DNA of 64,000 nt from Hypanus sabinus (Eukaryota): NCBI RefSeq assembly GCF_030144855.1, contig NC_082725.1:37510001-37574000 (forward strand), given 5' to 3'. Below are positions 1,077 through 46,238 of the stretch, piece after piece. The translations under genes and the position numbers were made by a program. The notes under the pieces are model-generated. The model searched no databases, was not told the DNA's origin, and was given only the letters and a program-made list of their open reading frames with translations. Position 1 is the first letter of the stretch. Each line of letters opens with the position of its first letter.

Positions 1077-1353
1077 CAATTTTGGCGAGACTGGCCACCA
1101 GTATCCAGATTGAGATGAAGTATGGACTCTGAACATGATTCCATTTGAAATCGACAACTGCGAAGCTGCTGTTACCGGAATTGACTTCTGCTGATCCGGA
1201 GCGGAGCTTTCCAGGGACCGAGTCGGATCCGCTCAGCTGGCGCCAGCTGAAGGCTCCTTCCACCGGGCGCCAGAGCAACAGAGACTGGCCGAGCAGAAAC
1301 ACGACCCAAGAGATGCACCAGGTCCCGCACACGCCCCTACAACTGCTCCCCAT
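1077..1353 (-). CDS. SLC9A3: SLC9A3 (NHE3) first coding exon, proximal alternative copy; partial CDS, rest of gene lies left of the window
   Basis: ATG at 1353-1351 in strong Kozak context (GACATGG). Encodes a hydrophobic signal-like N-terminus and [29 protein letters not shown], matching the NHE3 exon-1 motif ([19 protein letters not shown]). Ends after 92 codons+1 nt at donor G|GTAAGC (1076-1071), phase 1. Confidence 0.88.
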
Positions 1354-1409
1354 GTCGCCTCGCTCCTGGCGACCAGATCTCCGGGGAGAGACTGGTTCGA
1401 TCACTCAAA

Positions 1410-1456
1410 CTCCCGGCGGCTCGGTTTATAAAACAGGTCAATTAAAGGAGGTGGGG
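1410..1456 (-). promoter_or_regulatory. Core promoter of proximal exon 1 (TATA box 1425-1430, TTTAATTG element, G-rich box)
   Basis: Minus-strand TATAAA ~72 nt upstream of the ATG; 29/37 identical to the distal promoter. Confidence 0.7.
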
Positions 1457-2894
1457 CCACTCTCTCAACTCGGACTGAATTACAGTCCCTTCGCTCCCTT
1501 ACTGGATAACTAAATGAAATGCTTTCACTAAAAGTGACTGATGTCACCCTCAATCCGCCAGCGGGGAATCCCCGTCACTGTCCTTCGGTTCAAGCTGTCC
1601 CAATCATTCCAGGGAACCGAGTGTCCATTCAAAAGCGTGATAGATGTTTGTGCTTTAGACAGAGAGCCGATCAGATCGGTGACCATCCTTTGCACAGAAC
1701 GAGCGACGGTGTCGTGGGCGTCCAGGATCCCGGGACTGACCCGGGGTGATCGCCAGCCCTCTTCGTCCCGAGCGGCACTCCGCAAATCGCACCGACTTCG
1801 TGGCTGAACTCATGTCAAGTACTACTTGTGACAACCCCCGAGGCAAAAAGACCCAAATGTTAAGGTTCAGAACAAGAACAACTGGGACCGCTAATTTACA
1901 AAACCTAAGCGGCAGGATAGATTCAACCGATTGAAACGCAAATTGCGCGCTCCTCTGTTGGAATGACTGAGGGATCTTTGTACTCCCCCACCCCCATTCT
2001 AATTCTAAATCTGAGTAATACAGCATGGAAACGAGTCATTTAGCCCAACTAGTCCATGCACATCAAGATGTCCATCTAAATTAATCCCATTTGCCAGGGT
2101 TTGATCTCCTAGCCAAGTACTTCTCCAATATCTTTTAAATGTAGTTACTGTAGTTATCTACCACTTACTCTGAGAATCCTGGTATGTTTAAAATAAATCT
2201 GCATCAATGTTTAGACCTTACTTATTCTTACCTTAAACCCCAGAATCTGGAAGAGTGGAAGAGGTAGGCACAGCACAGCATGTCTTGGAGAAATCGGGCT
2301 GATCGTTCAAACCACTCAAGAAAGGGCAATCCATTGGGACTATATACCCCAGAGTCAACATTATTTATCTCCTCTCTCAGTTCATTAGTTTGTATTGTGA
2401 AAGTCAGGTTTAAAAACAATTATTGGAAAAGACAATTAATTCTAATTGTAAGCACCCCGCAGTGAAAATAGACCATGCAGTGCTGTAAGCACAGTGTGAG
2501 ATTGTCTCTATTAGTCTGTGATAAAACTTACTGGCTACTTGTTCCACATGGACGTTCCCCCAAGATGTGTTGAGTATCCATCTGTCACAATTGAGGAAAA
2601 TGTGTTCCTTAGTATAATTTAAGGAATTCACCAAACATCAGAATATATAAATATTTGGTTAATGTATACAATTAAAAACATACCCTCCAGTAAGATGTAT
2701 GAGATTTTCTCAATAAGCCATATCCTTGTGGGTTGTGGTGACCCCGCCTATACTGCAAGATCAGATCTGTTGGAAGCTTCCCCCAGTATTATCACTTGAT
2801 CAGGGTGGAGAGTTCCTGAGATCCCAGGAAGGATCTTGCCTGGAGTTCAGCTATTTAGCACTTAGCTCCTGGTATGGTCACCCTTAGCAGTAAA

Positions 2895-5880
2895 GTCAGG
2901 GGGAAGTTTAGGGTTAAAATCACTGGTATGCACCATGAAATTTGTTGCTTTGCAGCAGTAGTACATTCCATAAAAATAGTGCAAAAATGCACAAAAGAAA
3001 TAGGCTTATTGTTCACCTTCAGGCTTCTGTACCTCATTCCTGGATGATGGGGTCCTTAATAATGGATGCTGCTTTTATGAGGCATCACCTTTTGAATATC
3101 TCCTGGATGCTGGTGAGACTAGTGCCCATAATGAAGCTGGCTCAGTTCACAACTCTCTCAGCTTGGTGCAGAGGCCCCGCTATGCGACCAGTTAGAATGC
3201 TCTCCACAGTGCAACTACACAATTCTGCAAGTGTCTTGGGTGACAAACCATGTTTCCTCAAACTCCTAATGAAGTATATCTGCTGTCATCCCTTTTTTAA
3301 ATTGCATCAATATGTTGAGCCCAGGATAGATCTTCAGAACTATTAACACACAGGAACTTGAAACTGCTCACCTTTTCCATTGCTGATCTCGCAATGATAA
3401 CTGGTGAGTGTTCCCTCGATTTCCCCTTCCTGAAGTTCACAATCAATTCCTCAGTCTTACTGATGCTGAGCACAAGGCTGTTGTTTTGACACCACTTAAT
3501 CAGCTGATCTATCTCACTCCAGTATATCTTCTCATCACCATCTGAAACTCTGCCAATAGTTGTGTTGTCAGCAAATTTATGGATGGTGTTTCAGCTATGC
3601 CTAGCCACACAATCAATGATGTAGAGAGAGTAGAGCAGTGGGTTAAACACGCATCCTTGAAGTGCGGCAGTGTTGATTGTCAGCGAGGAGATGTTATTTC
3701 CAATCTGCACTGGCTGTAGTCTCCCAATGAAGATGTCAAGGAATCAGTTGCAGAGGGAGCTTCAGAGAACCTGGTTTTGGAGCTTGTTAATTGGCACTGA
3801 GGGTATGGCAGTGTTGAAATCGAAAAATAGCAACCTGATGTAAGCATTGCTATTGTCCAAACAATCCAAGGCTCAGTGGAGAGCCAGTGAGATTCCATCC
3901 ACTGTAGACCTATCCTGGTGATAGACAAATTGCTGCATGTCTAGGTTCTTGCTTAGGCAAGCTTGTTTCTGGTCATGTCCAACCTTTCGGAGCACTTCAT
4001 CACAGTAGGTGTGAGTGCAACTGGGCTATTGTCAAAGGTAGCTCACACTGCTCTTGTTGGACACTGGTATGACTGTCATTCTTTTGAAGCACATGGGAAT
4101 CTGTGACTGGAGCAGTGAGAGTTTGAAGATGTCCTTGAACACTCCTGACTAGTTTGTTGGCAAGTTTTACAGGTCCCTGCCATGTTTACCATTGGGGCCT
4201 GATGCCTTGCCCTCTTGAAAGATGTTCTGACTTCAGCCTCCGAGATAGATCACCAGGTGAAGCAGGGGTTTGCACAAGTATAGTTTTATTCTCTCTTTCA
4301 AAGCGTACATAAAAGTCATGAAGCACATCTGAGAGTGAAGCATCACAGCCATCCATAATGTTAGGTTTTACCTTGTAGGAGATAATGGCCTGCAAACTCT
4401 GCCAGAGTAGATGTGCATCCAACTTCCATCAGAATTGATCTTTTACTCTTAATCTAGCTTTCTTTAGGTCATACATGGACTTCTTGTATAGTTCTGGATC
4501 ACCAGTCTTGAATACCAAGATCTAGCCCTCAGCAGAATCTTCTGGTTCATCCATGGATGTTGGTTTGGGCATGTCCAGTATGTTCTCATATCAACGCAGG
4601 TCTTGATGAAGTGGGTAACAACTGTGACATAGTCAATCAAATTCGAAGATGAATGCCTGAATATTGTTCAGTCCACTAACTCAAAGCAGGGAGTAGAAGT
4701 ACAGCCAGGTGATCCGCCTTTCCAAAGTGTGGGCACGGGGTGGCATGGAAGCGTCCTTGATGGTGATATGACAATGGTCAGGTGTGTTCGCTCCTCTGGT
4801 TCCACAGGTAATATTGTTGGTAGTTGTTGAGAAACTTTTTCCTGCTAGCCTGACTGAAATCCCCTGCAATGATAAAGAAGTCATCCGGGTGTGCCATTTC
4901 ATGATGGCTGATCACTGTGCTGAGATCCAGTGCCTGCCTGACATTAGCCAAAGGTACAAAATTCATTACCAAACTATATTCCTTACAGGCAGCCACTAAC
5001 CAAAGAAACCTAATAGAGCCCATTAAAAAGATCTTCAAACACCCAATGTACAGGAAATAAAACAAAATATGGAAAGCAATTAAATAACATTCAGAACTGA
5101 AGCTCACAAAATTGAGTCCACAGCCATGAAGCCAGTCACGGCCGATCCAAGAGCCCATTAGCTGCAGGTCACAGCCTCAGTCCAGAAATGAGTAAAGTTT
5201 GTCAAAAGTGAGTAGAACACCAGCCCCTCCCATCCTGACCTTTTCAATCTGGCACAGTGCTTAGATCAGCCAAATAGTGGGTTCCTTCCTTGCTCTAGGA
5301 CCCGCGTTGTGCTGCTTTGATACATTCTCGGGACTAGGACCTACCTTCTCAATTCAGCCTCACCTCAGCTCTGCCATTTCGATTCACCTCCAAGTTCCCT
5401 CCAGCAATTGTTGAACATTGGCTTGTTTGTCGATCTCAGGCCCGGGCCCTGCCACTCCAATTCAGCCTGGATATACCACACCAGATGTTCCCGGGTGGGT
5501 GAGCAGGATTAAAACAGAATTACCATACTCCACCTCCTCTATTTTGAAAATACTCAGATGTTCTGTCTTTGCGGATGAAGACCACTGGCGGAGTGGCCCA
5601 TGTTTCCATGAAGCAAAACCACACAGCAGTCTCTGACATCTCTCTGGAACTGCAATCCTGCTCCAAGCTCTTCAACACTAGGAGATCTGCAGATGCTGGA
5701 AATTCAAGCAACACACAAAGGGTCTCAGCCCAAAACGTCGGCTGTGCCTCTACCTATAGATGCTGCCTGGCCTGCTGCGTTCCACCAGCATTTTGTGTGT
5801 GTTACTCCAAGCTCCTCGGTTTTATTTACCAGAGACTCCACATTCTGCAGCAGGTTAGTCAGGAGTAGGGGATCTAAGAG
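2895..5880 (-). mobile_element. Rex1/Babar-type non-LTR retrotransposon, decayed, spanning EN to 3' tail, with nested inserts
   Basis: Minus-strand remnants: NVESLVNKTEEL (~5815-5850), FCFMETW...RKDRT...RGGGV (5520-5640) and TRGANTPDHCHITIKDA (AP endonuclease), then RT-like sequence 3300-3900; many stops and frameshifts. Confidence 0.75.
5674..5804. mobile_element. Penelope-derived mini fold-back element with TSD
   Basis: Flanked by ctccaagctc(t/c)tc at 5661-5673 and 5805-5817; contains partial hammerhead motif gggtctcagcccaaaacgtc. Confidence 0.75.
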
Positions 5881-7929
5881 CTCTGTTTTTCAATTGTACC
5901 GGCAGAGCAGCCCACTTTCCTTGCTCTTAAAGGGGAACTGCACTCACAACCAAAGTCTCCCATCTGGGTTCCATCAATTTTGAGGATCAATTGATTTTTT
6001 AAACATCTTATAACAATTTTCAAATGGAATTACCCATGAACGTGACTGGATTTCAGCTCAGCAGTCCTAAGTGGGAATATTTGATGATTCCCATTGGAGC
6101 TGCACACAGAGTAGCCACTTATTGGCACCATCCAGACAAAGAGTGATCCAACTAAGACCTCAATGGTGGAGCTACTGGAAGATGATGACAGATCACAATG
6201 GCAGTGAAGGCCAAGGAAAGCAGCAACAATGAAGGGACTCCAGTCATCTTGCTTTCCATGTCAGTGGACGCAGACCCGGATCTGTCAGAAACCTGTGGTA
6301 GCTGCTCATGTTTCAGCCTCTGTGCATTAAACAAAGTCATACAAAGGTATTCTGCATTAAGGAAATCCACCCTAACATCCTGGATATGTGGATCCTGCAT
6401 CAGCCTCTACAGCCTTAGGAGAACATCATACTTGACTCAAGTGATCACAGTACTATGGCTGGAAACTTCAATATTTGACTACCTATTTAGATACCTCCAC
6501 AACCTCAGGGCCAACTAAACTCTTTCAAATGGCACCACTATAATATTGGATAGTATGTGCATTGTAGGCTTCCTCAAACGACAATATAATAATGGCCTAG
6601 ATAACCAATTTCCAAAAAGGGGAAGAGATAGATCTTGTCTGGGATACCCGTAAGAACGTTTCCATTCTATAGTAGTCTGTTGCCATCTTCCTCATCAACT
6701 GGAGGGAGCAGACAACACATTAGTTGAATATCTTAAAGACAGCACCATAAATATGCATAGCTTTGGCAACCTGATGTGATGAATTCATTGTTCAAAGAGC
6801 TTGGTATAAAAGACACAAAATTGCAACTGTTTGCAGAAGGCTAGAGGTGCCAGCTGGGGTTCAATTACTGTACAGTGCTCTCAACTCTGAGGCAAAAAGT
6901 TATGAATTTAAGTCTCTTCACTCCTCAGACATTCATAATACATTCTGACAATTCAGAACTGTCTAGAGATAATGTAACATTACCAAACGTTGCCTTCTAA
7001 GTTACATCCCTTAAACTTCAGCTGATGAAAAATACTGCTGTTCCTATTCTATTCCTCTTTACCCCCATTCCTAGAGATTACTAAACTAATTGACAGCTTT
7101 CCAGCAAAACCTCAAATGTAAAGTTCTCATTCACTTAGTGAAATGCACATTTCCAAGAAATCTGCATTTAGCCACATCTGTTTCCTCAACATCTAGTACC
7201 CATCCACAGGGAAATTGTCTCCATTTCACACCCATTTTTTCAGCTAACAATTTATTTCTAACTCTCTGTACCTTGATACCAAACATAGAAATAAAGCATG
7301 GTATGAAAATGCACTTGAACAACAGGAGATTCATGAAGAGATATCATGAGTTGTTCACATTTACCCTCATGTATTGGTTTCCTTTTGTTCCTACCTCTCA
7401 AATGCTTACCATTGAAACAGTAAAAAGGGTGGACCTTCATCCTGACAAATGTGCATAGCACACAGGAAACTACAAATATTAACACTGATTATTATAGAAG
7501 TCCTTTGTCAAAATAATCTGGTTCTGTGCACTCTAAGAGTGCCTTTAAATCACATTTTATGGCGTAGCTGACTGCAATTGTAGGCATGTTCCACATACGT
7601 TTGTGAATTAAGCATATACTTGGAGAAAATGCATACAATTGTAAGCACAACGGTCATCTTTGCTTCGGTAAGGAAGGTACGTGCTGAAGAATAAAGGCAT
7701 GCTGATAGACTCTCAAGATAAATGGAAGCTCTTCCTATGGTCATAGATCACCTGGGCTGTGAGGGAGTGAAAACACCTATAGAGATAAGACTTCTCATGG
7801 TTTACCAACTATCATGCCATGTAGTCAACATCACCTTTGCCATGCAGCAGCACAAGATCCCCATGGACGCTTACTCAATCTTCCTGCTGCTGACTGGAAA
7901 AAGAATTCAATATAATAAGATTCTATTAA

Positions 7930-9350
7930 ACATTGTTCCCTTGATCCAGAAAGGGAGTAGAGATAACCTACAAAATTATAGACCAGTGAGTCTTAGTTCA
8001 GTTGTGGGCAAGTTGTTAAAGAAGATCCTGAGAGGCAGGATTTCTGAGCATTTGGAGAGACAATCTGATTAGAGATAGTCAGTACGGTTTTGTCAAGGGC
8101 AGGTCATGCCTTACGAACCTGGTTGAATTCTTTAAGGGTGTAACAAAACACATTGATGAAGGCAGAGCAGTGGATGTAGTGTATATGGATTCCAGTAAGG
8201 CAATTGATAAGGTTCCCCATGCGAGGTTCATTCAGAAAGTAAGGAGGCATGGGATCCAAGGAGAACTTGCTTTGTGGGTCTAGAATTGGCTTGACCACAG
8301 ATGGCAAAGGGTGGTTGTGAAAGGTTCATATTCTGCATGGAAGAACGGTAACCAGTGGTGTTCCACAGGGATCTGTTCTGGGAGCCTTACTCTTCATGAT
8401 TTTTATAAATGATCTGAATGAAGAAGTTGAAGAGTGGGTTAGAAAGTTTTGCTGATGATACAAAAGTTGGGGGTGTTGTGAATAGTGTGGAGGGCCATCA
8501 GAGGTTATAGTGGGACATCGACAGATTGCAGAACTGGGTTGAGAAGTGGCAGATGGACTTCAACACAGAAAAGTATGAAGTGGTTCATTTCGGTAGGTCA
8601 AATTTGAAGACAGAATATAATATTAATGGTAAGATACTTGGCAGTATGGAGGATCAGCAAGATATTGGGTTCCATGTCCATAAGACGCTCAAAGCTGCTG
8701 CTTTGAGTTGACTGTGTTGTTAAGAAGGCGTAGGGAGTGTTGGCCTTCATCAACCATGGGATTGAGTTCAAGAGCGATAAGGTAATGTTACAGCTATATA
8801 CGACCTTAGTTAGACCCCACTTGGAGTACTGTGTTCAGTTGTGGGCACCTCATTACAGGAAGGATGTGGATACTATAGAGAGTGCAAAGGAGATTTACAA
8901 TGATGTTGCCTGGATTGGAGTGTGTACCTAATGAGAATTGGTTGAGTGAACTTGGCCTTTTCTCCTTGGTGCGACAGAAAATGAGAGATGACCTGATAGA
9001 GGTGCATAAGATGATGAGAGGCATTGATCGTGTGGATAGTCAGGGGCTTTTCCCAGGACTGAAATGGCCAACCTGAGGGGTATAGTTTTAAGCTGCTTGG
9101 TACAAGGGGGATGTTGGAGATAGTATTTTTTTTTTATACACAGAGTGGAATGCACTGCCAGCAGATGTGATAGAGGTGGATACAGTAGGGTATTTTAAGA
9201 GACTCTTAGATAGGTACATGGAGCTCAGAAAAATAGAGGGCTATGCAGTAGGAAAATTCTAGGCAACTTCTAGAGTTGGTTACATGGTCGACACAACATT
9301 GTGGGCCAAAGGGTCTGTATCGTGCTGTAGATTTTCTATGTTTCTATAAC
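7930..9350 (+). mobile_element. CR1 LINE, 5'-truncated RT region and 3' UTR
   Basis: NYRPVSLSSVVGKLL, FADDTK, QNWVEKWQMDFNTEK and LVRPHLEYCVQLWAPHYRKD motifs; ttctatgtttctat tail. Confidence 0.9.
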
Positions 9351-9394
9351 CACCCCGCAAAGCTGCATTAATGAACAGTCTTATGCAATACTTC

Positions 9395-9715
9395 ACTGCA
9401 AAGCTGCCCCGACTTCTATGCTTCATTCCCGCTAACACAATGAACTGATAAGCAAGGCTTTGGGCCTCCTCCAGGCTGCTCCAGGGTTCAGATCCGAGGA
9501 TCTTTTGGTTCAGAATGCTGTCGTTTGCTTCAATTGTTTGAATAATTTGTATTTTTTTTTTCTTTCTCTTGCGCAGCGAGTGTTGGTCTTTTATTTTTGT
9601 TCTTTTCTTTTTAATTGGGTTCCTTCGGGTTTCTTGCTTTGTGACTACCTGTGAGCAAGCAAATCTCAAGGTTGTATAAATTATACATTCTTTGATAATT
9701 AGTGAGTCTTGAAGG
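9395..9715 (+). repeat. Non-autonomous retroposon family (related copy at 32180-32535)
   Basis: Shares actgataagcaaggctttgggcct...gcaaatctcaaggttgtata with 32289-32500; tail resembles Rex1-type 3' ends in this window. Confidence 0.6.
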
Positions 9716-10249
9716 GGCTAGATGTAAACAGAAAACAACTCAAAGCTTGGGAGAGCCCAAACCATGGAAGGTCACTGGCACAGCCACATCAGCATCCAAT
9801 GACAAACTGCAGCTCTGACCCACTCTAAAGCTGCAGTTGTATCTAGAGCAAATGGTAGTTTGAGTGAATTGATGTACGTGACATTGTTTCTACATTGATC
9901 AGTTGGACTAACTGCTCCCTGAAGCTCCTGACAGTGCTTTAAGGAGAGGTTCTCTTCTCTGTGCTCCGATACAGCATGGTCTTTCCCTCATCATGCCAGA
10001 TTTCAACTCTACTACCTGCTACTACACCAATACCTGGAGCAATTGTTCTGCGCAGCTGACAACGTCTGAACAATGTCCTTTCACAACTGTCACCCCTTTG
10101 CTAGAGCCTTTTGCAGCTTGAAACATTTGAAAGCGTCATGTATATAATTAAAGCAAGAGTGGGTGCAAAGAAAATGGAAATCTTAAATCATTCATGATGC
10201 CTTGTAATAAATCTACTGACAAAAAGTAGCTTCGGTGTTGTTGAATGAA

Positions 10250-10580
10250 GCCATGCCTGTTTAAAGCAGCATCCATCAACCTGGATGCTCACCATCCAGG
10301 CTATACTCTCTTCCCTCTGCTATCATGGAGGAGGAGGTACAAAAGCCACAGGTCCCACAGGTTCAGGAACACTTACTACACTTCAACCATCATAGATATC
10401 TTCACTCACCACAACACTGAACTGATCACTGAATACAACTGACAGACTCACCTTTGAAGACTACCACGTATTCTCATTGATTCTATTGTACTTTTGTTCT
10501 AATGTGAATGCCCACAAGAAAATTAATATGAGGGTAGAATGTGGTGACATACACTTCGATAATAAATTTACTTCGAACTT
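10250..10580 (+). mobile_element. Rex1/Babar 3' fragment
   Basis: HHPGYTLFPLLSWRRRYKS...RFRNTYY C-terminal motif plus aataaatttacttcgaac tail. Confidence 0.7.
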
Positions 10581-11372
10581 TTTCTTTCCACTGAGGCATC
10601 AAGCTGCATGATTTCAGTGCCCTGTTGAACTCTGGCATGATGATCTGTCTGAGCTTTTATAGTGGTGGGGATTTGCTGAATATGGACCAACAGTGTCCAC
10701 CTTTCACTGTGCACGCAAGTTTCGGACACTAACTGAGCCAAATCGATATCAATGTTTTACAAAGCATGAATGGCTAAGAATTTCTTGACAAAGGCCCATC
10801 AGATAACAAAACATTTCACTCACTTGGAGGTTTCACAGTGTGTCAGGACACCATGAGTACACGGGACTTCACGGTGTACTAAGATCCTGCTAGATCTATT
10901 TTTCAGAAGATAAAATTAATGGCTCTGCCCAAATTCTTCCATGGAAATACCAAAATATGTTGTTTTAAGCATCATACACCTCCATAATATATCCAGCAGC
11001 AAAGGGAATCCAAAATAAATATTATTGCGGATGCTGGAAATTTGAAGGACAACAAAATGCGAAAATACTATCAGGAAGGTAATCAATCAAAAATTTAACA
11101 CTAACTTTGGTCTCCAGAAACGCTGTCAAGCCTGCTGAGTATTTTCAAGAAACAAAGGGCACACTTACAACCTGTTAATATGCAATTCGTTGTTAATCAT
11201 TTAAGGCAAGATTTTAGCAGAACTAGAATTATTGACCCAAAATAGATTACACTTCTCATTAAACATTATCAATGCAACCGCAAATCAGATTAATTACAAA
11301 AAATATCAAGAAATATCATGGATTTAAAGTCTAACAAGTCGGTTAGATACTAAGAAACGTTCAGGTGGAAAG

Positions 11373-11612
11373 GGGCACCACAGTAGTGTAGTAGTTAGTG
11401 TAATGCTATTACAGCTCAGAGCATTGGATTCGCAATTCAATTCCAGTGTCACCTTTAAGGAGTTTGTACATCCTCCCCATGAGTGAGTGGGTTTCTCCCA
11501 CAAACCAAATTCAGGTCAGTAAACTAATTTGAACAGTCCTTTCCTATCCTGTGATTAGGCAAAGTTCACTGGGCCAGAAGAGCCCTTTCTGCACAGAATC
11601 TTAAAATAAATA
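11373..11612 (+). mobile_element. tRNA-derived SINE
   Basis: Head cagtagtgtagtagttagtgtaatgctattacag, body taaggagtttgtacatcctcccc, A-rich tail; related copies at ~20165, 32665 and 60810. Confidence 0.6.
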
Positions 11613-14600: not shown

Positions 14601-14839
14601 GGACACAGGGGATTCATCAGGAACTTGCAGGTGAAAAGTGGATCCATGTGGGAGGTTTGGTAGGTAGATGAGTGCAGCAAGAAGATTGGAGCTATTGTGA
14701 CTGGAGAAAGGAAGGTGGAAAGAACATCTCCAACACTCACCTGTTTTGAGATTGCTTTGAAAACTGAGTTTTATATGTATATACATAATCACGTGTGCAT
14801 GGCTTTCAGAGTCCAAAGATTATAAAAGTAATCAGGATG

Positions 14840-18400: not shown

Positions 18401-18405
18401 TAAAG

Positions 18406-33032: not shown

Positions 33033-33057
33033 ACACACACACACACACACACACACA
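33033..33057. repeat. (AC)n microsatellite
   Basis: About 12 AC units. Confidence 0.95.
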
Positions 33058-34309: not shown

Positions 34310-35210
34310 AATCTGTCAATGAGCAGAGGGATTTTGGAGTTTTGTGTATGAATCATAAGTTAGCGTGTACATGCAACGTATAGTTGGGAAGGTAAAAGAC
34401 ATATTGACCTTATTGCAATTGGGTTCAGTTTTAAAAATAGAGTATATTACAATAGACAGGTGTTGCTCAGACCACACCTGCAATATTGTATAAGCTTTAG
34501 TCCCCTTATCTAAAAGGATATACTGACATTGGAGTCAGTCCAGATGAAATTCACCAGGCTAATTCCTGGGATGCCTCAGCTCCAGAAAAATCCTGATCTC
34601 TGGTCCAGGTGCATATTTGCCTTGTAATTCTGGGCTTCCCCGGGTGCTCAGATCTCTTCCCACCTCTCAATGATGTGTGGGTCAGGAGGTTAATTGGTCA
34701 CAACAAAACGCGCCTTGGGCATTTAACAGAACATGCAAAGGATTGAGAAAAATATGACGAGAATAAAATGGGATTAGTATGGGGACAATGGTCAGTACAA
34801 AATTGATCAGCCGAAGGATCTGTTTTAGTATTTATGACTTTGGGACAAGAATGGCTAGAAATGTTGGATTTGCATTCTTTGAAATTTAGAAGTATGAAGA
34901 GTGACCTTAATGAAACGATAAAGATCCTAAGAAAACAAGGTAGATGTTGAGATGATTGCAGAAGTGGGGAAGTCTTGAACAAGAGAAGGAAGCTATGAAG
35001 GAACCAGTCATTTAAAACTAAGGTGCATAGGAGTTTCTTCTCATAGGCACATGGAACTGTGAAGTGTCAGAATTATCTGACTGAGTCTTATGGAGCTAGA
35101 ATACTGGAAGTATTTAAAGAGGAGGTAGATTTTCTGAATGAGGATAAGGGGTGATCATATTTGATCAATATGGTCAGTGGTGATCATATTAAATTGAGAG
35201 GCAGGCACCA
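34310..35210 (+). mobile_element. Degenerate CR1 3' region interrupted by a SINE (~34570-34840)
   Basis: LRPHLQYC-like segment and attcaccaggctaattcctgggatg; CR1 resumes after 34840. Confidence 0.6.
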
Positions 35211-35223
35211 TACTTGATACATG

Positions 35224-35759
35224 CACTCAATGGCCAATTTATTACATACACCTGCTTGTTAATAACAAACATCTATTCAGCCAGTCATGTCTCAGCGACT
35301 CAAAGCAGGCATGGTCAAGAGATTCAGTTCTTGTTCAAACCAAACATCCAATTTGGGAAGGAACGTGATCCAAATTACTTTGGACCATGGAATGACTGTT
35401 GGCACCAGATGAGACAATTTAAGCATCTCAGAAACTGCTGATCTCCTCAGATTTTCATGCACAGCAGTCTCTACAGTTTACAGAACAAAAATAGCACCCT
35501 TTGAGTGATGATTCTGTGCATGAAAATATCTTGTTAATGCGAGAGGTCAGAGGAAAATGGCCAGACTTCTTGAAGCCGACAGGAAGGTGACAGTAACTCA
35601 AACACACTTTACAACAGTGGTGTGCAGAAGAAGCGTATCTGAATGCACAACACATTGAACCTTGAAGTGAATGGGCTACAGCAGCAGAAGGCCATGATCA
35701 TACATACAGTGGCCTCTTTATTAAGTACAGGACGTAACTAATAAAGTGGCCACTGAGTG
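35224..35759 (+). mobile_element. Tc1/mariner internally deleted element
   Basis: TIRs cactcaatggccaatttatta / taataaagtggccactgagtg followed by TA at 35760-61; internal SISETADLL.FS.T.VS.VYR HTH remnant of a Tc1 transposase. Confidence 0.82.
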
Positions 35760-36709
35760 TATATTCACTACTTCCTTCATTGCTTGCATACTCCTCTGCA
35801 TTGTCATTCTTCTTAAACAATGCCTTATGTAAGTTTTTGTTTCCTTTTCGCTATGACGTACAAGTCATGAACACCATTATATTTCAAAAAGTTCTGCAAG
35901 TGTCTGCTGCCACACCTCAAATAAACCAAGTGGCAATTCATCCTTTTGAAGTCTGTAGAATGTTATATTGCCCAATGTTCTTCCCTCTTTTTTAGGATTA
36001 TCTTGATAGTAAGTCAAGGAACAATAATCACCAAAAAGTCCTCAATTAAGTTTCAGCTGTTTATTTTTAAAATTTTGGAACAAGGGCTATATTATTTCCT
36101 CATAAAGATAAGAATGTTCACACAAATGAACGGAAGCTATACAAAACATTCATACTCATCCTTACTTTTTCAGATCTACAGGACATTTGAAACATTTTTA
36201 TATTACAATCATTTACTTCTGGTGTCCACAACAGACATGCAATCAACGTTTGTCCAAAAGTCCACCTAGAAGCTATTGGATTTACCTTTAGCCAACTTCG
36301 TTGTAATGTTAACTTAAGAATAACTATTGGCCAAAGCAGAGCTGCTGTGTAATTCTTCAGATAGTCTGCGGGATTACTTTCTTTCACCTAAAACAGAGTT
36401 TAACATCACAGCCAAAAGGAGTGCCAAGGTACTATATTAAATATTACCAACTCGTGCATATACAGAACTTGGGGAAATGCATCAGTGACTTCTCAAACAA
36501 TTGGCCATTTACATAAAATAAAAGACCCAAATCTGAAAAAAGAGCTTGGTGCATTCCCAGAAAAGTAAACTTACATATCATTGGGATAAACACGATCTGC
36601 AGATTTTGGAAATGAAAGCAGTACACACAAAATGCAAAAGTAACTCAGCACACCAGGCTGCATTGATGCAAAAGACTAAACAGTTGATGTTTCTGCCAGA
36701 GACCTCCAG

Positions 36710-37360
36710 TGAATCAAATTGAATTGAAATTATTACCTACATCCTTCATATATACGAGGAGTAAAAATCTTTACATCACATCGCCAATGTGCAATTTATT
36801 GTAATTTGTAATAAACAGTATGTACAACAGAATAATCAATATAACATAGAAATACAGTTGTGCCAACATGAGTTAAGCAGTCTGATGGTCTGGTAGAAGA
36901 AGCTGTCCTGGAGCCCGTTGGTCCTGGCTTTAATGCTGCGATACCGTTTCCCAGATGGTAGCAGCTGGAACAGTTGTGGTTGAGGTGACTCACGTCCCCA
37001 ATGATCCTTCGGGCCCTTTTTACACACCCATCTTTGTAAATGTCCTGAATAGTGGGAAGTTCACATCTACAGATGCGCTGGACTGTTCACACCACTCTCT
37101 GCAGAGTCCTGCAATTGAGGGAAGTACAGTTCCCATACCAGGCAGCGATGCAGCCAATCAGGATGCCCTCAATTGTGCTCCTGTAGAAAGTTCTTGGGAT
37201 TTGGGGGCCCACACCAAACTTCTTCAGTAGACTGAGGTGAAAGAGGCACTATTGTGCTTTCTCCCCCACCACACAGCCAGTATGTACAGATCACAGGAGA
37301 TCCTTGGTGATGTTTATGCCGCGGACTTTAAAGCTGTTCACCCTCTCATCCCCACATCCA
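36710..37360 (-). mobile_element. Rex1/Babar 3' fragment, relatively young
   Basis: QLFQLLPSGKRYRSIKARTNGLQDSFFYQTIRLLN; (tgaat)n tail at 36710-36730. Confidence 0.85.
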
Positions 37361-38839
37361 GTCTATTATTATTTTAGTCTATTATTGGGATAAGGTGCTG
37401 GACTGGGTTTCTGAGTCATAATACAGATGACATTTTAAGTATGACTGATGGTCTCCACCTCTCCTTCCCTTCTCTTCCAGTTTCCCCCTTCTCCAAAACA
37501 GTGTCCTTGTTTACACATGGAGATGCAAGACCTGAGATGACATTCTTGTTTCTACTCTTAACTTCAGACTCCTGTTACTAGCTCCATCATATGAGAGTGG
37601 GGAGTAGGGGGGTTTGGATGGTAATTGAGTGAAGAAACATTAACCTAATCCCAAACACTTTGTAAGGTCTCCAAATGATTTTTTTTCCACCTTAAATTCA
37701 GCCATCAGTTGTGAACAAGAACTTTGGCTAAACTGATCTACCCTCTCTGCAGTGATACAAATTATGTCCTTGTACCTCACCAATTGATATCAGATGATTC
37801 ATTCTTGTCGAGGAGCATCACTGGAACTGTTCTTAACTAAGTGGTTCATATCCAAATTAGGTTATCAATTTCATCATCAGAAGTGATTGGCTGGGCAAGA
37901 GGTTAGAAGATTTTTAAAAAATTAATACCTTGAATTGAATCCTTTCCAAATATAAGCACATAAGTCATTGAAAATCCAAAATAGTTATTTTACTTGGAGG
38001 ATTATTTTATTTACACTAAGTTATTTTTACTTATTTTTCTAAAGCACAGCTATTTTTGCTCGCTGCTCTCTTAACTAAACCTTTTTTGAAACTTTTCCTA
38101 TATTAGTTTATCCACTGACCTCTTTGCAATTGAGGTCAATTATCTAGGTTGTTCCCATGGAAAAGCCAGAGATGAAGTTGAACCAAATACAGAACAGCAA
38201 AGCAGCAATACCTTCAGGCTCTCTGTCAGCCACTTCATCTCCACTGTTACTGGATTGTAGTCCCAAGGAAAATCAGATTCCACACTGTATTATCATGAAA
38301 ATTCATCCCAAAGTGATCTGCTATGTTGACAAGAGTCCATAACATTTTGAGATGGGTCTTTGAAATAGTACAACAGCAAGTGTGCAGCATATATAAAAAC
38401 ACTGACAAATAGAGAACGCAGTTGCTTCCTGTTTGAATCACAACAGTTAACTGTTCACAGACCCCAAGCATCCTACTTCACAGCTCTGCAGTGACCCAAA
38501 CCACAAGCTAGTTATACACTTTACAGCAGCAACCACAGTAAAGCACTCCAGTCAACCCCAATGCATAATATGGACTTCTGACCATACACAATTCTCCACT
38601 ACCTTGTACTGTCTGACCCCTTTCAATATTAACTTCAATGAAACTTAATACTGCATATGCTGGAAAGCAAAAAAAAAGGAAAACACTGGAAAAATACACA
38701 GCATCTGTGGAAGGAGAACAGAACTAATATCTCAGATCTTTGACCTGACAAAAAACCTTCAATCCGAAGCTCCATTTCTCTTTCCAGAAACGCTGCCTGA
38801 CCTAGTGAGTATTTCCAACATTCTTTGCTTTCATTCTAT

Positions 38840-40510
38840 GAGAGGGACAAAATTGATCCACTGGAAGACCAGAATGGTAATCCATGTGTGGAGCTGAAAC
38901 AGATGAGGGAGACCTTTATTGCATTCTTTGCATGGGAGACAGATAGTCTATAGAAGTGAGGCAAAACAGCATCAACTTCATGGACCCTGTACAGATTACA
39001 GAGGAGGTGTTTGATACCCTGAGGCAACCAAGGATACCCAGGCATTCCTTGATGCCCTACTTGCTTGAGACCCAGCAAGTGCAGAAATTGCTGGGGCCCT
39101 AGCAGAGATATTCAAAACATCCTTAGCGACAGAAGAGGTACCCGAGGACTGGAGGATAACCAATGTTGTTCCACTGTTTAAAAAAGGCTCTAAACAGAAA
39201 CCAGAGAATTATAGGCTGGGTTAGCCTGACATCAGTTGTGGGAAAGTTATTGCAAGGTAATAGGAATATATTTGGATAAACATGGGACTGATTAAGGATA
39301 GTCAGTATGGCTTTGCGCGTAGTAGGGCGTTACCGGGATAGTGGATGAAGGCAAGGCAGTGGATGCAGTCTACATTGACTTTATTAAGGCATTTGGCAAT
39401 GTCCTGCATGGGAAGCTGGTCAAAAAGGTTCAGTTGCTCAGCTTTCAGGATGAGGTCGTAAATTGGATAAGACATTGGCTTTGTGGGAGAAGCCAGAGAG
39501 TGGTAGTAGAGTATTGTCTCTCTGACTGGAGGACAGTGAGTAATGGTGTGCCGCAAGGATTGGTGTTGGGTCCTTTGTCATCTATATCAATGATCTGGAT
39601 GATAATATGGTTAACTGGATCAGCAAATTTGTGGATGACACCATGATTGGGGGTGTAGTGGATAATAAGGAAGAGGAATCTGCATCAGCTGGAAAAATGG
39701 GCTGAAAATGACAGATGGAATTTAATGCAGACAAGTGCAAAGTTTTGCACTTGGTAGGTCCAACCAGGGTAAGTCTTACACAGGAACTGCAGGACACTGA
39801 TGAGTGTGGTAAAACAAAGGGATCTGGGAATAATTTGTTGAAAGTGGCTTCACGGGTAGATGGGTTTGTAAAGAAAGCATTTGGCACACTGGCCTTCATA
39901 AATCAATGTACTGAGTACAAAAGATGATATATTAATTTGAAATTGTACAAGACAATGATGGGGCCCAACTTGAAGTATTGTGTGCAGTTTTGGTCACCCA
40001 CCTATAGGAAAGATGTAAAATAAAAGGTTGAAAGAATGCAGAGCAAATTTGCAAAGATGTTGCCGGGTCTGGAGTATTTGAGTTATAAGGAAAGATTGAA
40101 TAGGTTAGGACTGTATCCTTTAAAACATAGATGATTGAGGGGCGATTTGATAGAGGTATACAAAATTATGGGGGAGATAGGGTAAATGCAAGCAAATGTT
40201 TTCCACTGAATTTGGGTGAGACTACAACCTGAGGTCATAGGTTAAGGGTGAAAAGTTAAAGGGGTACATGAGGGGGGATCTTTCTCACTCAGCAGGCCAG
40301 AAGAGGCTGGAATGAGCTGTCAGCACAAGTTATCCATGTGAACTCAATTCCATCATTTCAAGCCAAATTTGGACAGGTACATGATTAGTAGGGATATGGA
40401 GTGCTATGGTCCAGGTGCAGGCCATTGGAAGTAGGGAGTTTAAATGGACTAGAAAAGCCAAAGGGTTCCATTTCTGTGCTGTACTTCTCCATAACTGTAT
40501 GACTTTATTT
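38840..40510 (+). mobile_element. CR1 LINE, decayed RT and 3' UTR
   Basis: DEGKAVDAVYIDFIKAFGNV, VPQGLVLGP, FVDDT and MEFNADKCKVLH motifs. Confidence 0.88.
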
Positions 40511-40571
40511 TTAGCCTTTATCCCAGCCATAAGACTCACTTTCTTCATGTGACTCATCTTTCCCCCCCATC

Positions 40572-40687
40572 CCCAGGTCCCGATGAAGGAGTGCCAATAA
40601 TCTTCTCTATAGATGTTGCCTGGCCTGCTGAGTTCCTCCAGCATTTTCCTCCAGGATTTCCAGCATCTGCAGATATTCTCCTGTTTG
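40572..40687 (+). repeat. Penelope terminal-repeat fragment
   Basis: gtcccgatgaagg...tagatgttgcctggcctgctgagttcctccagca...ccagcatctgcaga. Confidence 0.7.
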
Positions 40688-42204
40688 TCGTAAGACCTCT
40701 TCCAGGGCCTTTTCTCTGTAAGGCCAAGTTGCAGCCTCTCATATTCTGCAAAGCTTTGCAATTGGCAATCTTCCCCTCACCTCCCACCTGACTCTATTTA
40801 TTAAACTGTATCAGATAGGCTCCAACCTTTACAACTTCCTTCAGTCTCAGTTCCTCAGCAAACATAACTTACCACGTCAATACCCGAGGACCAAAATGCT
40901 AAAATCACATTCAATTCCAGGTACTTCACACGTGTTTAATTCCTAACTTACTTAACCTTCCAACTGTCCAACTCTAGCTTCTTTACTCAGACTTCTAGCA
41001 ATTTCTCCTCCTTTTCTTGTTTCCTTGAGAGCTTATAGGCAATTTCCTTGACAATGGCCTTCAACCAATATGAGAAATAATCAGACAACACATTTCCGAC
41101 TTTCTATTTTTGGGTGAAGAATCTTAGCCAAGTAAACAAGCCTTTGCACTTCTTACAAACGTTTCAGATAAAAGAGCAACAAACAGTGTGCAGGAGGAAA
41201 TCAGCAGGTTAGCAGTACCTATTGGGGTGAGGGTGGGATGTTGGGTGAAGGAATTGTTGATGCTTTGCATCAAAACCCTGGATCAACTCAACCAGCTGAA
41301 CTAATCCAGCAGAGGAAACTTTTTTTGCGCACGATTCCAGCATTCAAGATAATAAGATAAAGTCATCATCCATACTACCTGCCACAGGAGAGCAATTCAG
41401 CTTTCTTGATGGCAATCTACAATCAAACCTAGTGGACACAAAGCCCACACTCAATAAACGATATCTGTGGTCAATAGCCTTGAAATGGGATAGCCTCTTC
41501 GTCACTGCCAGTGACTTCAGTCTGGCTAACTTTAAAAGTGTGTTACCAAAATACTACCAGTACATCTCCTGTCCCACCAGGGGACCAAAAACCCTTGAAC
41601 ACTGCTAGACAACCAAAAATACCTATTGAGCCACACCCCATCCACACTTTGACAAATCAAACCATCAGGCTGTGCTCCTTCTCCCTGCATACAAACAGAA
41701 GCTGAAATATGAAGATCTAGAATAGGTTAGTGCTGGTCTGGGGAAATAGATGAGCTTCTAAATGACTGCTGAGTCAGGTCATTCAAAGTCTCAGCAGCCA
41801 GCCTAGATGAGTATGTTGCCACCATCATGGACTTTATCAGCATGTGCGCTGAGGACTATCCAAACGTTCCCAAATCGAAAACCATTAGAGGAGCCCGGAA
41901 GTCCACTACTTACTAAAATCTAGGACTGTAATTTCAAACAGGTGACCATAATTTCAAAAAGAAATCAAAATTATGACCTCTGTAAAGCTATGAGGGATGC
42001 CAAGAGACTGTACTTGTCCAAATTCCAGTTGCAGACCAGCTGTCATTTATGTGCAGGGTTTACATGCTACAACAGGATACAAAATTACGTCAGGCAGCAT
42101 TGTTGACAACAGCACATTCCTTAACAATCTACTTCATTATGACCTTGCATTTTGTTGTCTACCCATACTTTATTCTGCAATATCATTTTACCTTGTACTA
42201 CTTC

Positions 42205-43590
42205 ATAGAAAATCCTCAGCACATTACATACAGGCCCTGCAGCCCACAATGTTGTGCCGACCGTGTAACCTACTCTAGAAGCTGCCTAGAATTTCCCTAC
42301 TGCATGGCCCTCTATTTTTTTCTAAGTTCCATGTATCTATCTAAGAGTCTCCTAAAAGACCCTATTGTATCTGCCTCTACCAGCTTCGCTGGCAGTGCAT
42401 TCCACACACCCACCACTCTGTGTGAAAAGCATACTTACAAGCACCTTTAAACTATGCCCCCTCATGTTAGCCATTTCAGACGTGGGAAAAAGCCTCTGGC
42501 TATCCACATGATTAATGCATTTCATCATCTTAAACACCTCTATCAGGTCACCTCTCATCCTCCATCGCTCCAAGGAGAAAAGGCCAAGTTCACTCAACTT
42601 ATTCTCTTAAGGCATGCTCTCCAATCCAGGCAACATTCTTGTAAATCTCCTCTGCACTCTCTCTGTAGCATCCACACCCTTCCTGTAATGATGTGACCAG
42701 AACTGAACACAGTACTTCCAGTGGGGTCTAACTAAGGTCATATATAGCTGTAACATTACCTCACAGCTCTTCAACACAATCCAATGGTTGGTGGAGGCCA
42801 ACACACCATACAGCTTCTTAACAACACAGTCAACATGTGCAGAAGCTTTGAGTGTCCTAAGGACACGGACCTCAAGATCTCACTGATCCTCTACACTGCC
42901 AAGAGTCTTATTATTAGTATTATATTGCTATTGAGGCAGTGCAGCGTAAGTTCATGAGGTTAATTCCCGGGATGGCAGGACTGTCGTATGTTGAAAGACT
43001 GGAGTGACTGGGTTTGTATACACTGGAATTTAGAAGGATGGGAGGGGATCTGATTGAAACATAAGATTATTAAGGGAGTCGACACACTAGAGGCAGAAAA
43101 CATGTTCCTGATGTTGGGGGAATCCAGAACCAGAGGCCACAATTTAAGAATAAGGGGTAGGCCATTTAGAACGGAGTTAAGGAAAAACTTTTTCACCCAG
43201 AGAGTTGTGGATCTATGGAATGCTTTGCCTCAGAAGGTAGTGGAGGCCAATTCTCTGGATGCTTTCAAGAAAGAGTTAGATCTTAAAGATAGCGTGGTCA
43301 AGGGATATGGGGAGAAGGCAGGAACGGGGTACTGATTGTGGATGATCAGCCATGATCACAGTGAATGGTGGTGCTGGCTCAAAGGGCCAAATGGCCTACT
43401 CCTGCACCTATTGTCCAGTATATTCTGTCTTGAAATGAACCACTTCACACTAACCTGGGTTGAACTCCATCTGCCATTTCTCAGCCCTATTCTGGATCCT
43501 GTCGATGTCCCGCTGTAACCTTCAACAACCCTCCAGACCATCCACAACGCCCCCAACTTTTGCGTCATCAGCAAACTTACTAACCCACCT
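42205..43590 (-). mobile_element. CR1 LINE (minus strand) containing a nested plus-strand CR1 3' fragment at ~42928-43415
   Basis: Minus: LVRPHWKYCVQFWSHHYRK and RMRGDLIEVFKMMK. Plus insert: GESRTRGHNLRIRGRPFRTELRKNFFTQRVVDLWNALP. Minus CR1 resumes after 43416. Confidence 0.85.
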
Positions 43591-45834
43591 GTCTTTCGAT
43601 GCAGAGTTGTAATGAATTGATCTGTATGAACACTGTACCTTGATACATTTAACAATAATAAACCAACCTACCTAAAACTTGGTTCTTGCTCTCAATGTTT
43701 AACATACAGTACCAATATGTAACCCAACTTAAAAAATACCAGGCCCCTAATCCAACAACTGACCAAAACAACGTGCACCCTAAACCAGGTCACTTATTTA
43801 TGAGTTTGTATATTAATTATCTCACTCTTGGTTACAAAGCAAACAAAACAAGATAAGGACTGGAACTGTAGTTCATCAGCAGTTAGCTCTTTCAAACTTT
43901 AAGAGACAATATACTGCAAACATACTCTTTGGCACTGAGAATGCATCAGCACAGGGTTCCTTTAATTTGGGCTGCCTGGCCATAGAGCACACCTACACTT
44001 AGCAATGGACTAAGAATCTGACTAGTGTATTCAGACTAAATCCAGCCTTTGTAGAGAATGCAGGTTAGGTGAGGGCCATCTTCCTCCAGTTGTAAAGGGA
44101 GGTGTTGAGCCCCCGGACTAGAAATGTGATGAAGAGCTGTATTCAATAAGCAATAGTCCAAGGTAGATGTCTTTACTGTCCAGGTGCTCCGGAGCTAGGG
44201 CCAGGGAGTCAATGTCAGCCATAGACCTGCTTTAGCACAAAACCAGAACAAACATGAGGCCAGTTTGTTATTTCATGTGGAATATTACTGACACCAGATA
44301 TCCTAATGGATAATTTGCTCCAATTGATAAAGGGGACGTACATTTCAGTTCAAGTTCACAGAGCGACATCACCCCCCCCCCCCAAACAAAATGTCCGCCT
44401 AATCTATGGTTCCCCCATATACACAGGGTTGTACCACTCAGTACGCAATTAACCAACAGGGCCGTTCATCGGAATGTTGGGGGAAACAGCAGCGCCCGAA
44501 GGAAGCTCATGAGGTTAAAAGGAAAAGCCAACTCTGGACCAGAACCAGAAAATGCTGAAAGAGTTGGGCCACATCAATGGGAGGGTAAGCGGGGTCAACG
44601 AACTGAAAATGTGTTGTGCAAAGGCCTCCGATCTGATTTTTCCCCCACAGATTGCGACCTGACCTGCTGAGTAGGTCCAGCATTTTTATTTATTGTTTTG
44701 GATTTCAAGCAAATTTCTCCCCCCCCCCACCCCCCGTGTGTGTGCCATGTCGACACAAGCAGCACCATAGGTCAGAATTGAAGCCGCGATCCGCACCGTT
44801 GTGCCACAACTGTTAGATGTAACGTAGCCGAAAGGTAGGAACAATCTAGACCCGACAACACAAAATTTATCTGAAAGCAAATTCATGTTTCCAGAAAGAT
44901 GCACGGACTGAATGGAGAGCCAGATTTCCCGCCCTACCAACAAGGAGACAAGATGCTGCGAGTGTGTGGTAAAAGCCCTTCCTAGACATTTTGTAAGGTA
45001 AACTGTTAGTAACAAAAAAAAACTGGAAAAAAAAGTGCTCTAAGTGTAGTTCTCATACTTCCAAATATTCCTGCACGTACCCCCAAGGTTAGTTGCTATG
45101 TCCCAGGGTGATGATGACTTGGTACAAGTGACTAGTCACTGGCGTTTCTGAACGCCCGGTTCAGGAACGACACTGAATCCGGGTGGACTCGCTTCCTGCC
45201 AGCTGTTTTGGTCAACAGCTTATTGCCTGAAGCAGACAACCAGACGAAATGCAAATGGCTTTTAATTAGCTCTATTTGTATGGTAACGAGCATGCAAAGC
45301 GCCCCAGAATGCTTTGGTCTGTTAAGAAACAAAATTATTTATAAATATTTTATAACACGTCAAGTAAATTGTTTCTTTAATGGTTAACGTTGGCCCCTTG
45401 TTTAAAGTTATCACCTCGACATACACGCCCTTCAACTCGCAATAAGGTTCTAAGTTTCTAATGATAGCAAGAACCATTGGAGAGTAGGTCAACTTTTTAA
45501 AGTGACAGGCAGCCTGGATTTAACAAATCCTCTCCGTTCCGCTTACAGATAATTAACGCCACTTAAGTCCTGTTGTACGAAATGTCATTGTACAATAGCA
45601 ACCCCAATGCATCTTCACACCATTTTATCCACAATTTACTCTGTCAGAAACAACTTCTGTGATCTAGCATTACAATGACTTCCCACAGTGGGCATCCTCA
45701 CTCAACAAGGTTGGAAGGCGAGACTTATCGAGGGATTAACGTTAAGAAAGAATGCGCATGTTACATTACAACGTAGCACAGTTAGTAACTGAAAGCTCCG
45801 TTAACACATCTATGGACAAGATTCCATCACTCAC

Positions 45835-46096
45835 CTATCTTCCCCAAACTGGCCACCAGAATCCACACTGCTATGATGTAAGGAGCTTGGACATGTTCCC
45901 ATCGGAAGGAGACGATACGAAAGCCAGGCTGGTGTCCGCTCGTCTCGTTACCTCCGTGAGACTCGCCTTGAAGCTCGGTGTCGCTCGGGGGATGCGCTTC
46001 CTCTTGCAAGCTGCAAGCCACCGGGTGGGAAAGCAACAGCCCAAGAGCCGTCAGCAAGGCACACCTGGCCGCAGACTCGCTCCTGCCTCTCCCCAT
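45835..46096 (-). CDS. SLC9A3: SLC9A3 (NHE3) first coding exon, distal alternative copy; partial CDS
   Basis: ATG at 46096-46094 (GAGATGG). Encodes signal-peptide-like [28 protein letters not shown] and [30 protein letters not shown]. Ends after 87 codons+1 nt at donor G|GTGAGT (45834-45829), phase 1 like the other copy. Confidence 0.9.
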
Positions 46097-46181
46097 CTCC
46101 TTCCCTCAGTGTGCTCTATGTGCGCGCGTCTGCCGTTGAACAGATCCCGAGTGAAACCGGTTCCGAGTATTCGAATCAGAC

Positions 46182-46238
46182 CTCCCAGCCGCTCTATTTA
46201 TAAACTCGGCCAATTAAACGTGGGGGGGGGGGGGGGGG
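46182..46238 (-). promoter_or_regulatory. Core promoter of distal exon 1 (TATA box 46197-46202, TTTAATTG element, G17 run)
   Basis: Minus-strand TATAAATAG ~100 nt upstream of the ATG; same 8-nt spacing between the TATA and CAATTAAA motifs as in the proximal promoter. Confidence 0.7.

What the first reader, a model, noticed from the sequence alone, without database searches (positions are those of the whole stretch)
1077..46238. One SLC9A3/NHE3 gene with two duplicated promoter+exon-1 modules 45 kb apart
Seen: two minus-strand exons each start with a strong-Kozak ATG, encode an unrelated signal peptide and linker, share 20/30 residues over the conserved TM block, and end at a phase-1 GT donor at the same codon. 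Each has its own TATA box and CpG island. By eye I found no exon 2-17 sequence between them. Known: in the houndshark Triakis scyllium, NHE3 has gill (NHE3g) and kidney/intestine (NHE3k/i) isoforms with different N-termini, attributed to alternative promoters. Inference: this window shows the genomic basis of that switch, a partial duplication of promoter+exon 1 rather than the whole-gene nhe3a/nhe3b duplication of teleosts. I cannot assign which exon serves which tissue. The shared motif favours NHE3 over NHE5, although the split codon (G|) is not diagnostic.
Basis: partly seen in the sequence, partly recalled or inferred. Interest (0 to 1): 0.75.

Follow-up and report, generated by a model that had tools for sequence, protein, structure and literature searches.

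The report
Stingray NHE3 gene: two alternative first exons
This stretch of the Atlantic stingray genome carries two alternative start modules (promoter plus first exon) of the single sodium/proton exchanger gene NHE3; both join the same gene body, an arrangement already known for sharks and rays, so the finding is correct but not new.

Summary
The observation and the interpretation both hold. The window is Hypanus sabinus (Atlantic stingray). Two minus-strand first exons encode NHE3 N-termini: a proximal one (ATG 1353, last base 1077) and a distal one (ATG 46096, last base 45835).

The proximal exon is identical to the first 92 residues of RefSeq NHE3 isoform X1 (XP_059801307.1). The distal exon is identical to the first 87 residues of the cloned stingray NHE3 cDNA (AAT45738.2, Choe et al. 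2005). The remaining 750 residues of the two proteins are 100% identical, so both exons join the same exon 2.

The species' own protein finds no other NHE exon anywhere in the 64 kb, which rules out tandem paralogues. Each exon sits in one of the window's only two CpG islands. Each lies behind the same core-promoter module, TTTAATTG followed by TATAAA at identical spacing.

Both exon types occur as isoforms X1 and X2 of one gene in Hemitrygon, Mobula, Chiloscyllium and Heterodontus. The duplication therefore predates the shark-ray split.

Two things are new and minor. RefSeq models the distal exon here as a separate 98-residue "NHE3-like" gene, which is an annotation artefact; white shark and sevengill shark carry short models of the same kind. 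The distal promoter is also deeply conserved. Tissue-specific use was not tested here.

The parts
45835..46096 (-). Distal first coding exon of NHE3: signal peptide, N-glycosylated linker (NET) and first membrane helix; 87 codons plus a split G. Donor GT at 45834-45833.
   Evidence: Translation. It is 100% identical to residues 1-87 of the cDNA AAT45738.2 (P0199).
46097..46535 (-). Distal 5' UTR and promoter: TATAAATA at 46202-46195, TTTAATTG at 46218-46211, a run of 17 C at 46238-46222, with the CpG island at 45751-46250.
   Evidence: Conserved with Heptranchias perlo across 46535-45824 (72% over 734 nt; promoter-only local score z = 83).
1077..1353 (-). Proximal first coding exon of NHE3: 92 codons plus a split G. 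Donor GT at 1076-1075.
   Evidence: Translation. It is 100% identical to residues 1-92 of RefSeq XP_059801307.1 (P0190).
1354..1486 (-). Proximal 5' UTR and core promoter: TATAAA at 1430-1425 and TTTAATTG at 1446-1439, inside the CpG island at 1001-2000.
   Evidence: Homologous to the distal core promoter (z = 10.5). Conserved with the proximal-type contig L002 from another species (z = 28.8) (66% over 777 nt).
1487..45834 (-). Interval spliced out of transcripts that start at the distal exon. It holds no NHE coding exon. It holds repeats and three blocks collinear with Heptranchias: 38025-38178, 24788-24874 and 20946-21236.
   Evidence: tblastn; blastn against L001; alignment.
44195..44229 (-). 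Second exon of the RefSeq model XP_059801309.1 (98 residues, "NHE3-like"). It adds AGLWLTLTPWP and a stop after the distal exon. Probably an artefact or a minor dead-end transcript.
   Evidence: No counterpart in Heptranchias. The cloned cDNA joins the distal exon to exon 2 instead.

Best explanation
The window holds the 5' end of the single SLC9A3 (NHE3) gene of Hypanus sabinus, on the minus strand. The gene has two alternative first exons, each behind its own TATA and CpG-island promoter.

Transcription from the distal promoter (about 46170) gives an mRNA in which the distal exon (donor after 45835) is spliced over 44.5 kb and past the proximal exon to exon 2, which lies off the window to the left. 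This mRNA encodes the 837-residue protein that was cloned as cDNA. Transcription from the proximal promoter (about 1400) uses the proximal exon (donor after 1077) and the same exon 2. It encodes the 842-residue isoform.

The module (core promoter, 5' UTR and exon 1) was duplicated before sharks and rays diverged, and both copies were kept.

The two proteins differ only in the signal peptide, a short glycosylated extracellular linker and a few residues of the first helix. The main consequence is probably separate transcriptional control: a gill form (distal) and a kidney/intestine form (proximal).

Shown here: both exons, their joining to one identical gene body, the absence of other exons, promoter homology, and conservation across species. 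Inferred: the transcription start sites and the tissue assignment.
For: - Exon identity to P0190 and P0199, with an identical 750-residue remainder.
- No other NHE exon in the window with the species' own protein.
- The only two CpG islands in the window sit at the two exons.
- TTTAATTG plus TATAAA at the same spacing, found exactly twice in the window against 0 expected. Promoter local alignment z = 10.5.
- Both N-terminus types are annotated as isoforms X1 and X2 of one gene in Hemitrygon akajei, Mobula birostris, M. hypostoma, Chiloscyllium punctatum, C. plagiosum and Heterodontus francisci.
- Distal-type exons from 14 species (13 plus this stingray's own) form one clade with support 97/93.
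- In Carcharodon the distal exon lies 39 kb upstream of the 840-residue PF00999 gene on the same strand.
- In Heptranchias there is no NHE exon for 30 kb downstream of the distal exon.
- Paper titles: Choe 2005 on stingray NHE3 in gills; Li 2013 on a novel NHE3 isoform in houndshark kidney and intestine.
Against: - No read-level evidence was obtained. The one read-laying run showed no splice joint at 45835: two runs were plainly DNA, and one possible RNA run had only a 162-nt contig over 45989-46147.
- RefSeq for this genome does not join the distal exon to NHE3. It models it as a 98-residue gene.
- Use of the proximal exon in this species rests on a predicted RefSeq model and on orthologous isoforms, not on a cloned cDNA.
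- Exon 2 is outside the window, so the shared acceptor was not seen in DNA.
- The proximal-type exons of sharks and of rays did not resolve as one clade.
Confidence: 0.93

Rival explanations
1. Two tandem NHE3 paralogues: the distal exon belongs to an upstream gene copy whose other exons lie between the two first exons.
For: Teleosts have whole-gene nhe3a/nhe3b duplicates (my own knowledge). RefSeq calls the Hemitrygon gene "3.1", which hints at a naming scheme with paralogues.
Against: tblastn with the stingray's own 842-residue protein finds no exon other than the two first exons in 64 kb. The two proteins are 100% identical over 750 residues, which diverged paralogues would not be.
Confidence: 0.01
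2. The distal exon is a separate short gene, or a dead-end transcript, as RefSeq models it (XP_059801309.1, 98 residues, second exon 44229-44195). On this reading it does not normally contribute to NHE3.
For: RefSeq has short "NHE3-like" models on this exon in three species.
Against: The cloned cDNA AAT45738.2 joins this exon to the full NHE3 body. The three short models end in three unrelated tails. The 44.2-kb exon is not conserved in Heptranchias. Six other species' RefSeq sets join the distal-type exon to NHE3 as an isoform, and in Pristis, Scyliorhinus, Amblyraja, Rhincodon and Hemiscyllium it heads the only NHE3 product seen in the clusters read. An 87-residue exon kept at 67-69% identity between ray and sharks is unlikely for a dead end.
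Confidence: 0.03
3. Only the distal exon is functional in this species. The proximal exon is a decaying relic that gene prediction picked up by homology.
For: Proximal-type exons evolve much faster (about 40-47% identity between distant species, against 67-69% for the distal type). No cDNA with it was seen for this species.
Against: The exon has an intact open frame, a strong start context, a consensus donor in the right phase, and its own CpG island and TATA box. Its promoter is conserved with another species (z = 28.8). The Hemitrygon exon is almost identical. The same type is annotated as isoform X1 in six species. By its title, the houndshark paper reports a second isoform in kidney and intestine.
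Confidence: 0.03

Closest known systems
Atlantic stingray NHE3 cDNA (AAT45738.2; Choe et al. 2005, Am J Physiol Regul 289:R1520)
   Same: Its first 87 residues are exactly the distal exon of this window. Its other 750 residues equal the RefSeq gene body.
   Different: The cDNA says nothing about gene structure. The window shows that its first exon lies 44.5 kb upstream of the first exon that RefSeq uses.
Houndshark (Triakis scyllium) NHE3 gill and kidney/intestine isoforms (Li et al. 2013, Am J Physiol Regul 304:R865)
   Same: One NHE3 with two N-termini used in different organs. The title is seen; the detail that the difference is N-terminal is from my memory of the abstract.
   Different: The Triakis sequences could not be fetched and the paper is not held. 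Which Triakis isoform matches which exon here is therefore inferred, not tested.
RefSeq NHE3 isoforms X1/X2 of Hemitrygon akajei, Mobula spp., Chiloscyllium spp. and Heterodontus francisci
   Same: The same two N-terminus types are joined to one gene body within one gene model.
   Different: In Hypanus sabinus the same distal exon is split off as a short "NHE3-like" gene. Carcharodon and Heptranchias carry short models of the same kind; their main NHE3 models were not read.
Teleost nhe3a/nhe3b
   Same: Separate control of gill and kidney/gut NHE3 expression (my own knowledge).
   Different: Teleosts achieve it by whole-gene duplication. Here only the promoter and exon 1 are duplicated.

Membership tests
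SLC9A3 (NHE3) gene | The encoded peptide is part of a protein with the Na+/H+ exchanger domain (PF00999) that is named NHE3, not NHE5 or NHE2. | tested here: met
   Both exons equal the N-termini of P0190 and P0199, whose cluster representative P0134 carries PF00999 and which are named NHE3. The exon peptides alone give no Pfam hit, as expected, because the domain starts later in the protein.
SLC9A3 (NHE3) gene | Conserved neighbourhood (in human, CEP72 lies next to SLC9A3; from memory). | tested here: inconclusive
   An 888-residue LRR_9/LRR_4 gene lies upstream on the other strand. Its identity as CEP72 was not checked.
Gene with alternative first exons and promoters | Two first exons, each with its own start codon and a donor in the same phase. 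| tested here: met
   Both are phase 1 with a split G completed to Val.
Gene with alternative first exons and promoters | Both first exons are joined to the same downstream exons in the products. | tested here: met
   The 750 downstream residues of P0190 and P0199 are identical. One is a cloned cDNA, the other a RefSeq model.
Gene with alternative first exons and promoters | No copy of the downstream exons lies between the two first exons. | tested here: met
Gene with alternative first exons and promoters | Each exon has its own mapped transcription start. | not testable with these tools
   A TATA box and a CpG island are present at both. No start-site data were available. The only possible RNA contig reaches 46147.
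Gene with alternative first exons and promoters | Different use in different tissues. | not tested
   Only paper titles were seen. The read tools gave no RNA with tissue labels.

The most novel reading that the evidence does not exclude
The duplicated module is a promoter switch kept for roughly 300 million years (my estimate of the shark-ray divergence). On this reading, a shared core (TTTAATTG, then TATAAA 16 nt downstream of its start) is steered to gill ionocytes or to kidney/gut by different upstream sequence and by the conserved blocks inside the 44.5-kb interval (38025-38178, 24788-24874). The fast-evolving proximal N-terminus would also have its own role in targeting or processing of the protein.
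Probability: 0.35. Interest if true: 0.45.

Novelty: already known. Interest (0 to 1): 0.25.

Why it matters
NHE3 is the main apical sodium-uptake and acid-secretion exchanger of elasmobranch gill, kidney and gut, and this stingray is a classic euryhaline model. Knowing that the published gill cDNA starts 44.5 kb upstream of the first exon used by RefSeq has practical uses. It lets isoform-specific primers, probes and reporter constructs be designed. It also corrects a misleading "NHE3-like" short gene model in this genome, and probably those of white shark and sevengill shark. The principle (two N-termini from alternative first exons) is already in the literature and in the RefSeq sets of related species, so this is confirmation and clean-up rather than discovery.

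Tried and rejected
- Pfam on the two exon peptides gave no hit, because they lie before the domain.
- A protein search with the proximal exon alone gave nothing, because the length filter hides full-length proteins.
- The representative search returned mostly first-exon fragments that read into introns.
- Sequencing runs: none is on record as RNA. Laying four runs on 41800-47600 gave no joint at the distal donor. X5 and X6 behave as low-coverage DNA, X3 covers only the repeat, and X1 has one 162-nt contig on 45989-46147. This gives no evidence either way on splicing or tissue.
- Li 2013 and Choe 2005 are not held. Other papers gave only their titles. Searches for descriptions of the isoforms found nothing useful.
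- Earlier scan notes had nothing on NHE3.
- Rfam on the whole window gave no hit.
- The N-terminus of RefSeq isoform X2 (22 residues) is not encoded in the window.
- The tandem-paralogue reading was rejected.

Full report
**What is in the sequence**

On the minus strand there are two open first exons. The proximal one starts with the ATG at 1353 and runs 92 codons plus a split G at 1077, followed by GTAAGC. The distal one starts with the ATG at 46096 and runs 87 codons plus a split G at 45835, followed by GTGAGT. Both start codons have G at -3 and +4.

The two peptides are 39% identical overall and share 20 of their last 30 residues, the block [20 protein letters not shown].

The only CpG-island-like stretches in the 64 kb are 1001-2000 and 45751-46250, against a whole-window CpG observed/expected of 0.26. 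The one exception is that the N-terminal parts are diverged homologues, not unrelated.

**Which genome and which gene**

The distal peptide is 100% identical to a RefSeq protein of Hypanus sabinus, the Atlantic stingray, named "sodium/hydrogen exchanger 3-like" (98 residues, XP_059801309.1).

A search with a lamprey NHE3 brought in full-length elasmobranch NHE3 proteins. Their 90% cluster contains three stingray entries:
- RefSeq isoform X1 (XP_059801307.1, 842 residues)
- RefSeq isoform X2 (772 residues)
- the cloned cDNA product AAT45738.2 (837 residues)

Residues 1-92 of X1 are exactly the proximal exon. Residues 1-87 of the cDNA product are exactly the distal exon. The remaining 750 residues of the two proteins show no difference at all. 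Both begin that shared part with VFHLSEK, the Val being the split codon G|TN.

This is the decisive result. Two first exons feed one gene body, and one of the two junctions is documented by a cloned cDNA.

**Not tandem genes**

tblastn with a cat and a lamprey NHE3, and then with the stingray's own proteins at word size 2, finds only the two first exons. The next best hit has E = 0.3. Exons 2-17 must lie to the left of the window.

The arrangement recurs in other species:
- In the white shark, the distal-type exon lies about 39 kb upstream of an 840-residue PF00999 gene on the same strand.
- In the sevengill shark, 30 kb downstream of the distal-type exon holds no NHE exon.

**The promoter was duplicated too**

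Upstream of both exons the same module occurs: TTTAATTG, then TATAAA starting 16 nt after its first base. The proximal copy is at 1446-1439 and 1430-1425, the distal copy at 46218-46211 and 46202-46195. The 22-nt pattern occurs exactly twice in the window and never in 100 shuffles. The pattern was derived from these two sites, so this only shows there is no third copy.

A local alignment of the 400 nt upstream of each ATG scores z = 10.5 against dinucleotide shuffles. It runs from the C-rich stretch through the TATA box into the 5' UTR.

The distal promoter is strikingly conserved with Heptranchias perlo (z = 83; 72% over 734 nt including the exon). The proximal promoter is conserved with a proximal-type contig from another species (z = 28.8).

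**Age of the duplication**

Both N-terminus types are annotated as isoforms of one gene in rays (Hemitrygon, two Mobula species) and in sharks (two Chiloscyllium species, Heterodontus). In a tree of the exon-1 peptides the distal type from 14 species (13 plus this stingray's own) forms one clade (97/93). The proximal type splits into a shark group and a ray group that the short alignment cannot join or separate. Given the shared position, one duplication before the shark-ray split is the simplest reading.

The distal type changes slowly (67-69% identity between ray and shark). The proximal type changes fast (about 40-47%).

**How it most likely works**

Each promoter starts its own transcript. 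A transcript from the distal promoter splices from 45835 over the whole interval, past the proximal exon, to exon 2. As a first exon, the proximal exon has no acceptor site.

The proteins differ only in the signal peptide, a short glycosylated linker and a few residues of the first helix. The likely point of the arrangement is therefore separate regulation.

The cDNA with the distal exon comes from a paper on NHE3 "in gills" (title). A houndshark paper reports "a novel isoform ... in the kidney and intestine" (title). From memory, that isoform differs at the N-terminus. I therefore assign distal to gill and proximal to kidney/intestine, as an inference.

**What failed**

No run on record as RNA holds either exon. 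The single read-laying run showed DNA-like coverage in two runs and only one short contig on the distal exon in a possible RNA run, with no joints at the donor. Splicing in tissues, start sites and tissue bias therefore remain untested here.

**RefSeq short models**

RefSeq splices the distal exon to a small exon at 44229-44195, which adds 11 residues and a stop. The white shark and sevengill shark have similar short models with unrelated tails. The small exon has no counterpart in Heptranchias, and the cDNA contradicts the model. I read this short model as an annotation artefact or, at most, a minor dead-end transcript, and the white shark and sevengill shark models probably likewise; their genes have no cDNA to test them against.

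**Verdict**

The phenomenon is already known from the 2005 cDNA, from the 2013 isoform paper and from RefSeq isoforms in related species. What this window adds is the physical map for the classic stingray model, the promoter homology, deep promoter conservation and an annotation correction. Interest is modest.

Noticed in passing
window 38025-38178: Non-coding block 79% identical over 160 nt to Heptranchias L001:14975-15132, collinear within the interval between the two first exons. Its core, TTCCATGGGAACAACCTAGATA..ATTGACCTCAATTGCAAAGA, is nearly invariant. It is a candidate enhancer.
   Followed up: partly
window 24788-24874 and 20946-21236: Two more blocks collinear with Heptranchias L001: 81% over 88 nt and 67% over 316 nt. 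The second could be a repeat.
   Followed up: no
window 44195-44229: RefSeq XP_059801309.1 uses this as the second and last coding exon after the distal NHE3 exon. It is not conserved and conflicts with the cloned cDNA.
   Followed up: yes
window 42188-43739: High-copy repeat. Summed contig depth reaches about 10^5 or more in the DNA runs, with many internal joints. It is probably a transposon family.
   Followed up: no
window 46222-46238: A run of 17 C immediately upstream of the distal TTTAATTG/TATA module. Heptranchias has only 5 C there.
   Followed up: no
outside the window (left of position 1): RefSeq isoform X2 of stingray NHE3 (772 residues) has a third N-terminus of 22 residues, with no signal peptide or first helix. 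It is joined to the same exon 2 and is not encoded in this window.
   Followed up: partly
window about 52626 to at least 56096, + strand: An 888-residue gene with LRR_9/LRR_4 domains is annotated upstream of the distal exon on the other strand. It is possibly CEP72, the human neighbour of SLC9A3 (from memory). Not checked.
   Followed up: no
Carcharodon carcharias XP_041040533.1; Heptranchias perlo XP_067856643.1 (L001:10001-10261): In both species the distal-type NHE3 first exon is modelled as a separate short "NHE3-like" gene (129 and 89 residues), probably the same artefact as in the stingray. Their main NHE3 models were not read.
   Followed up: partly
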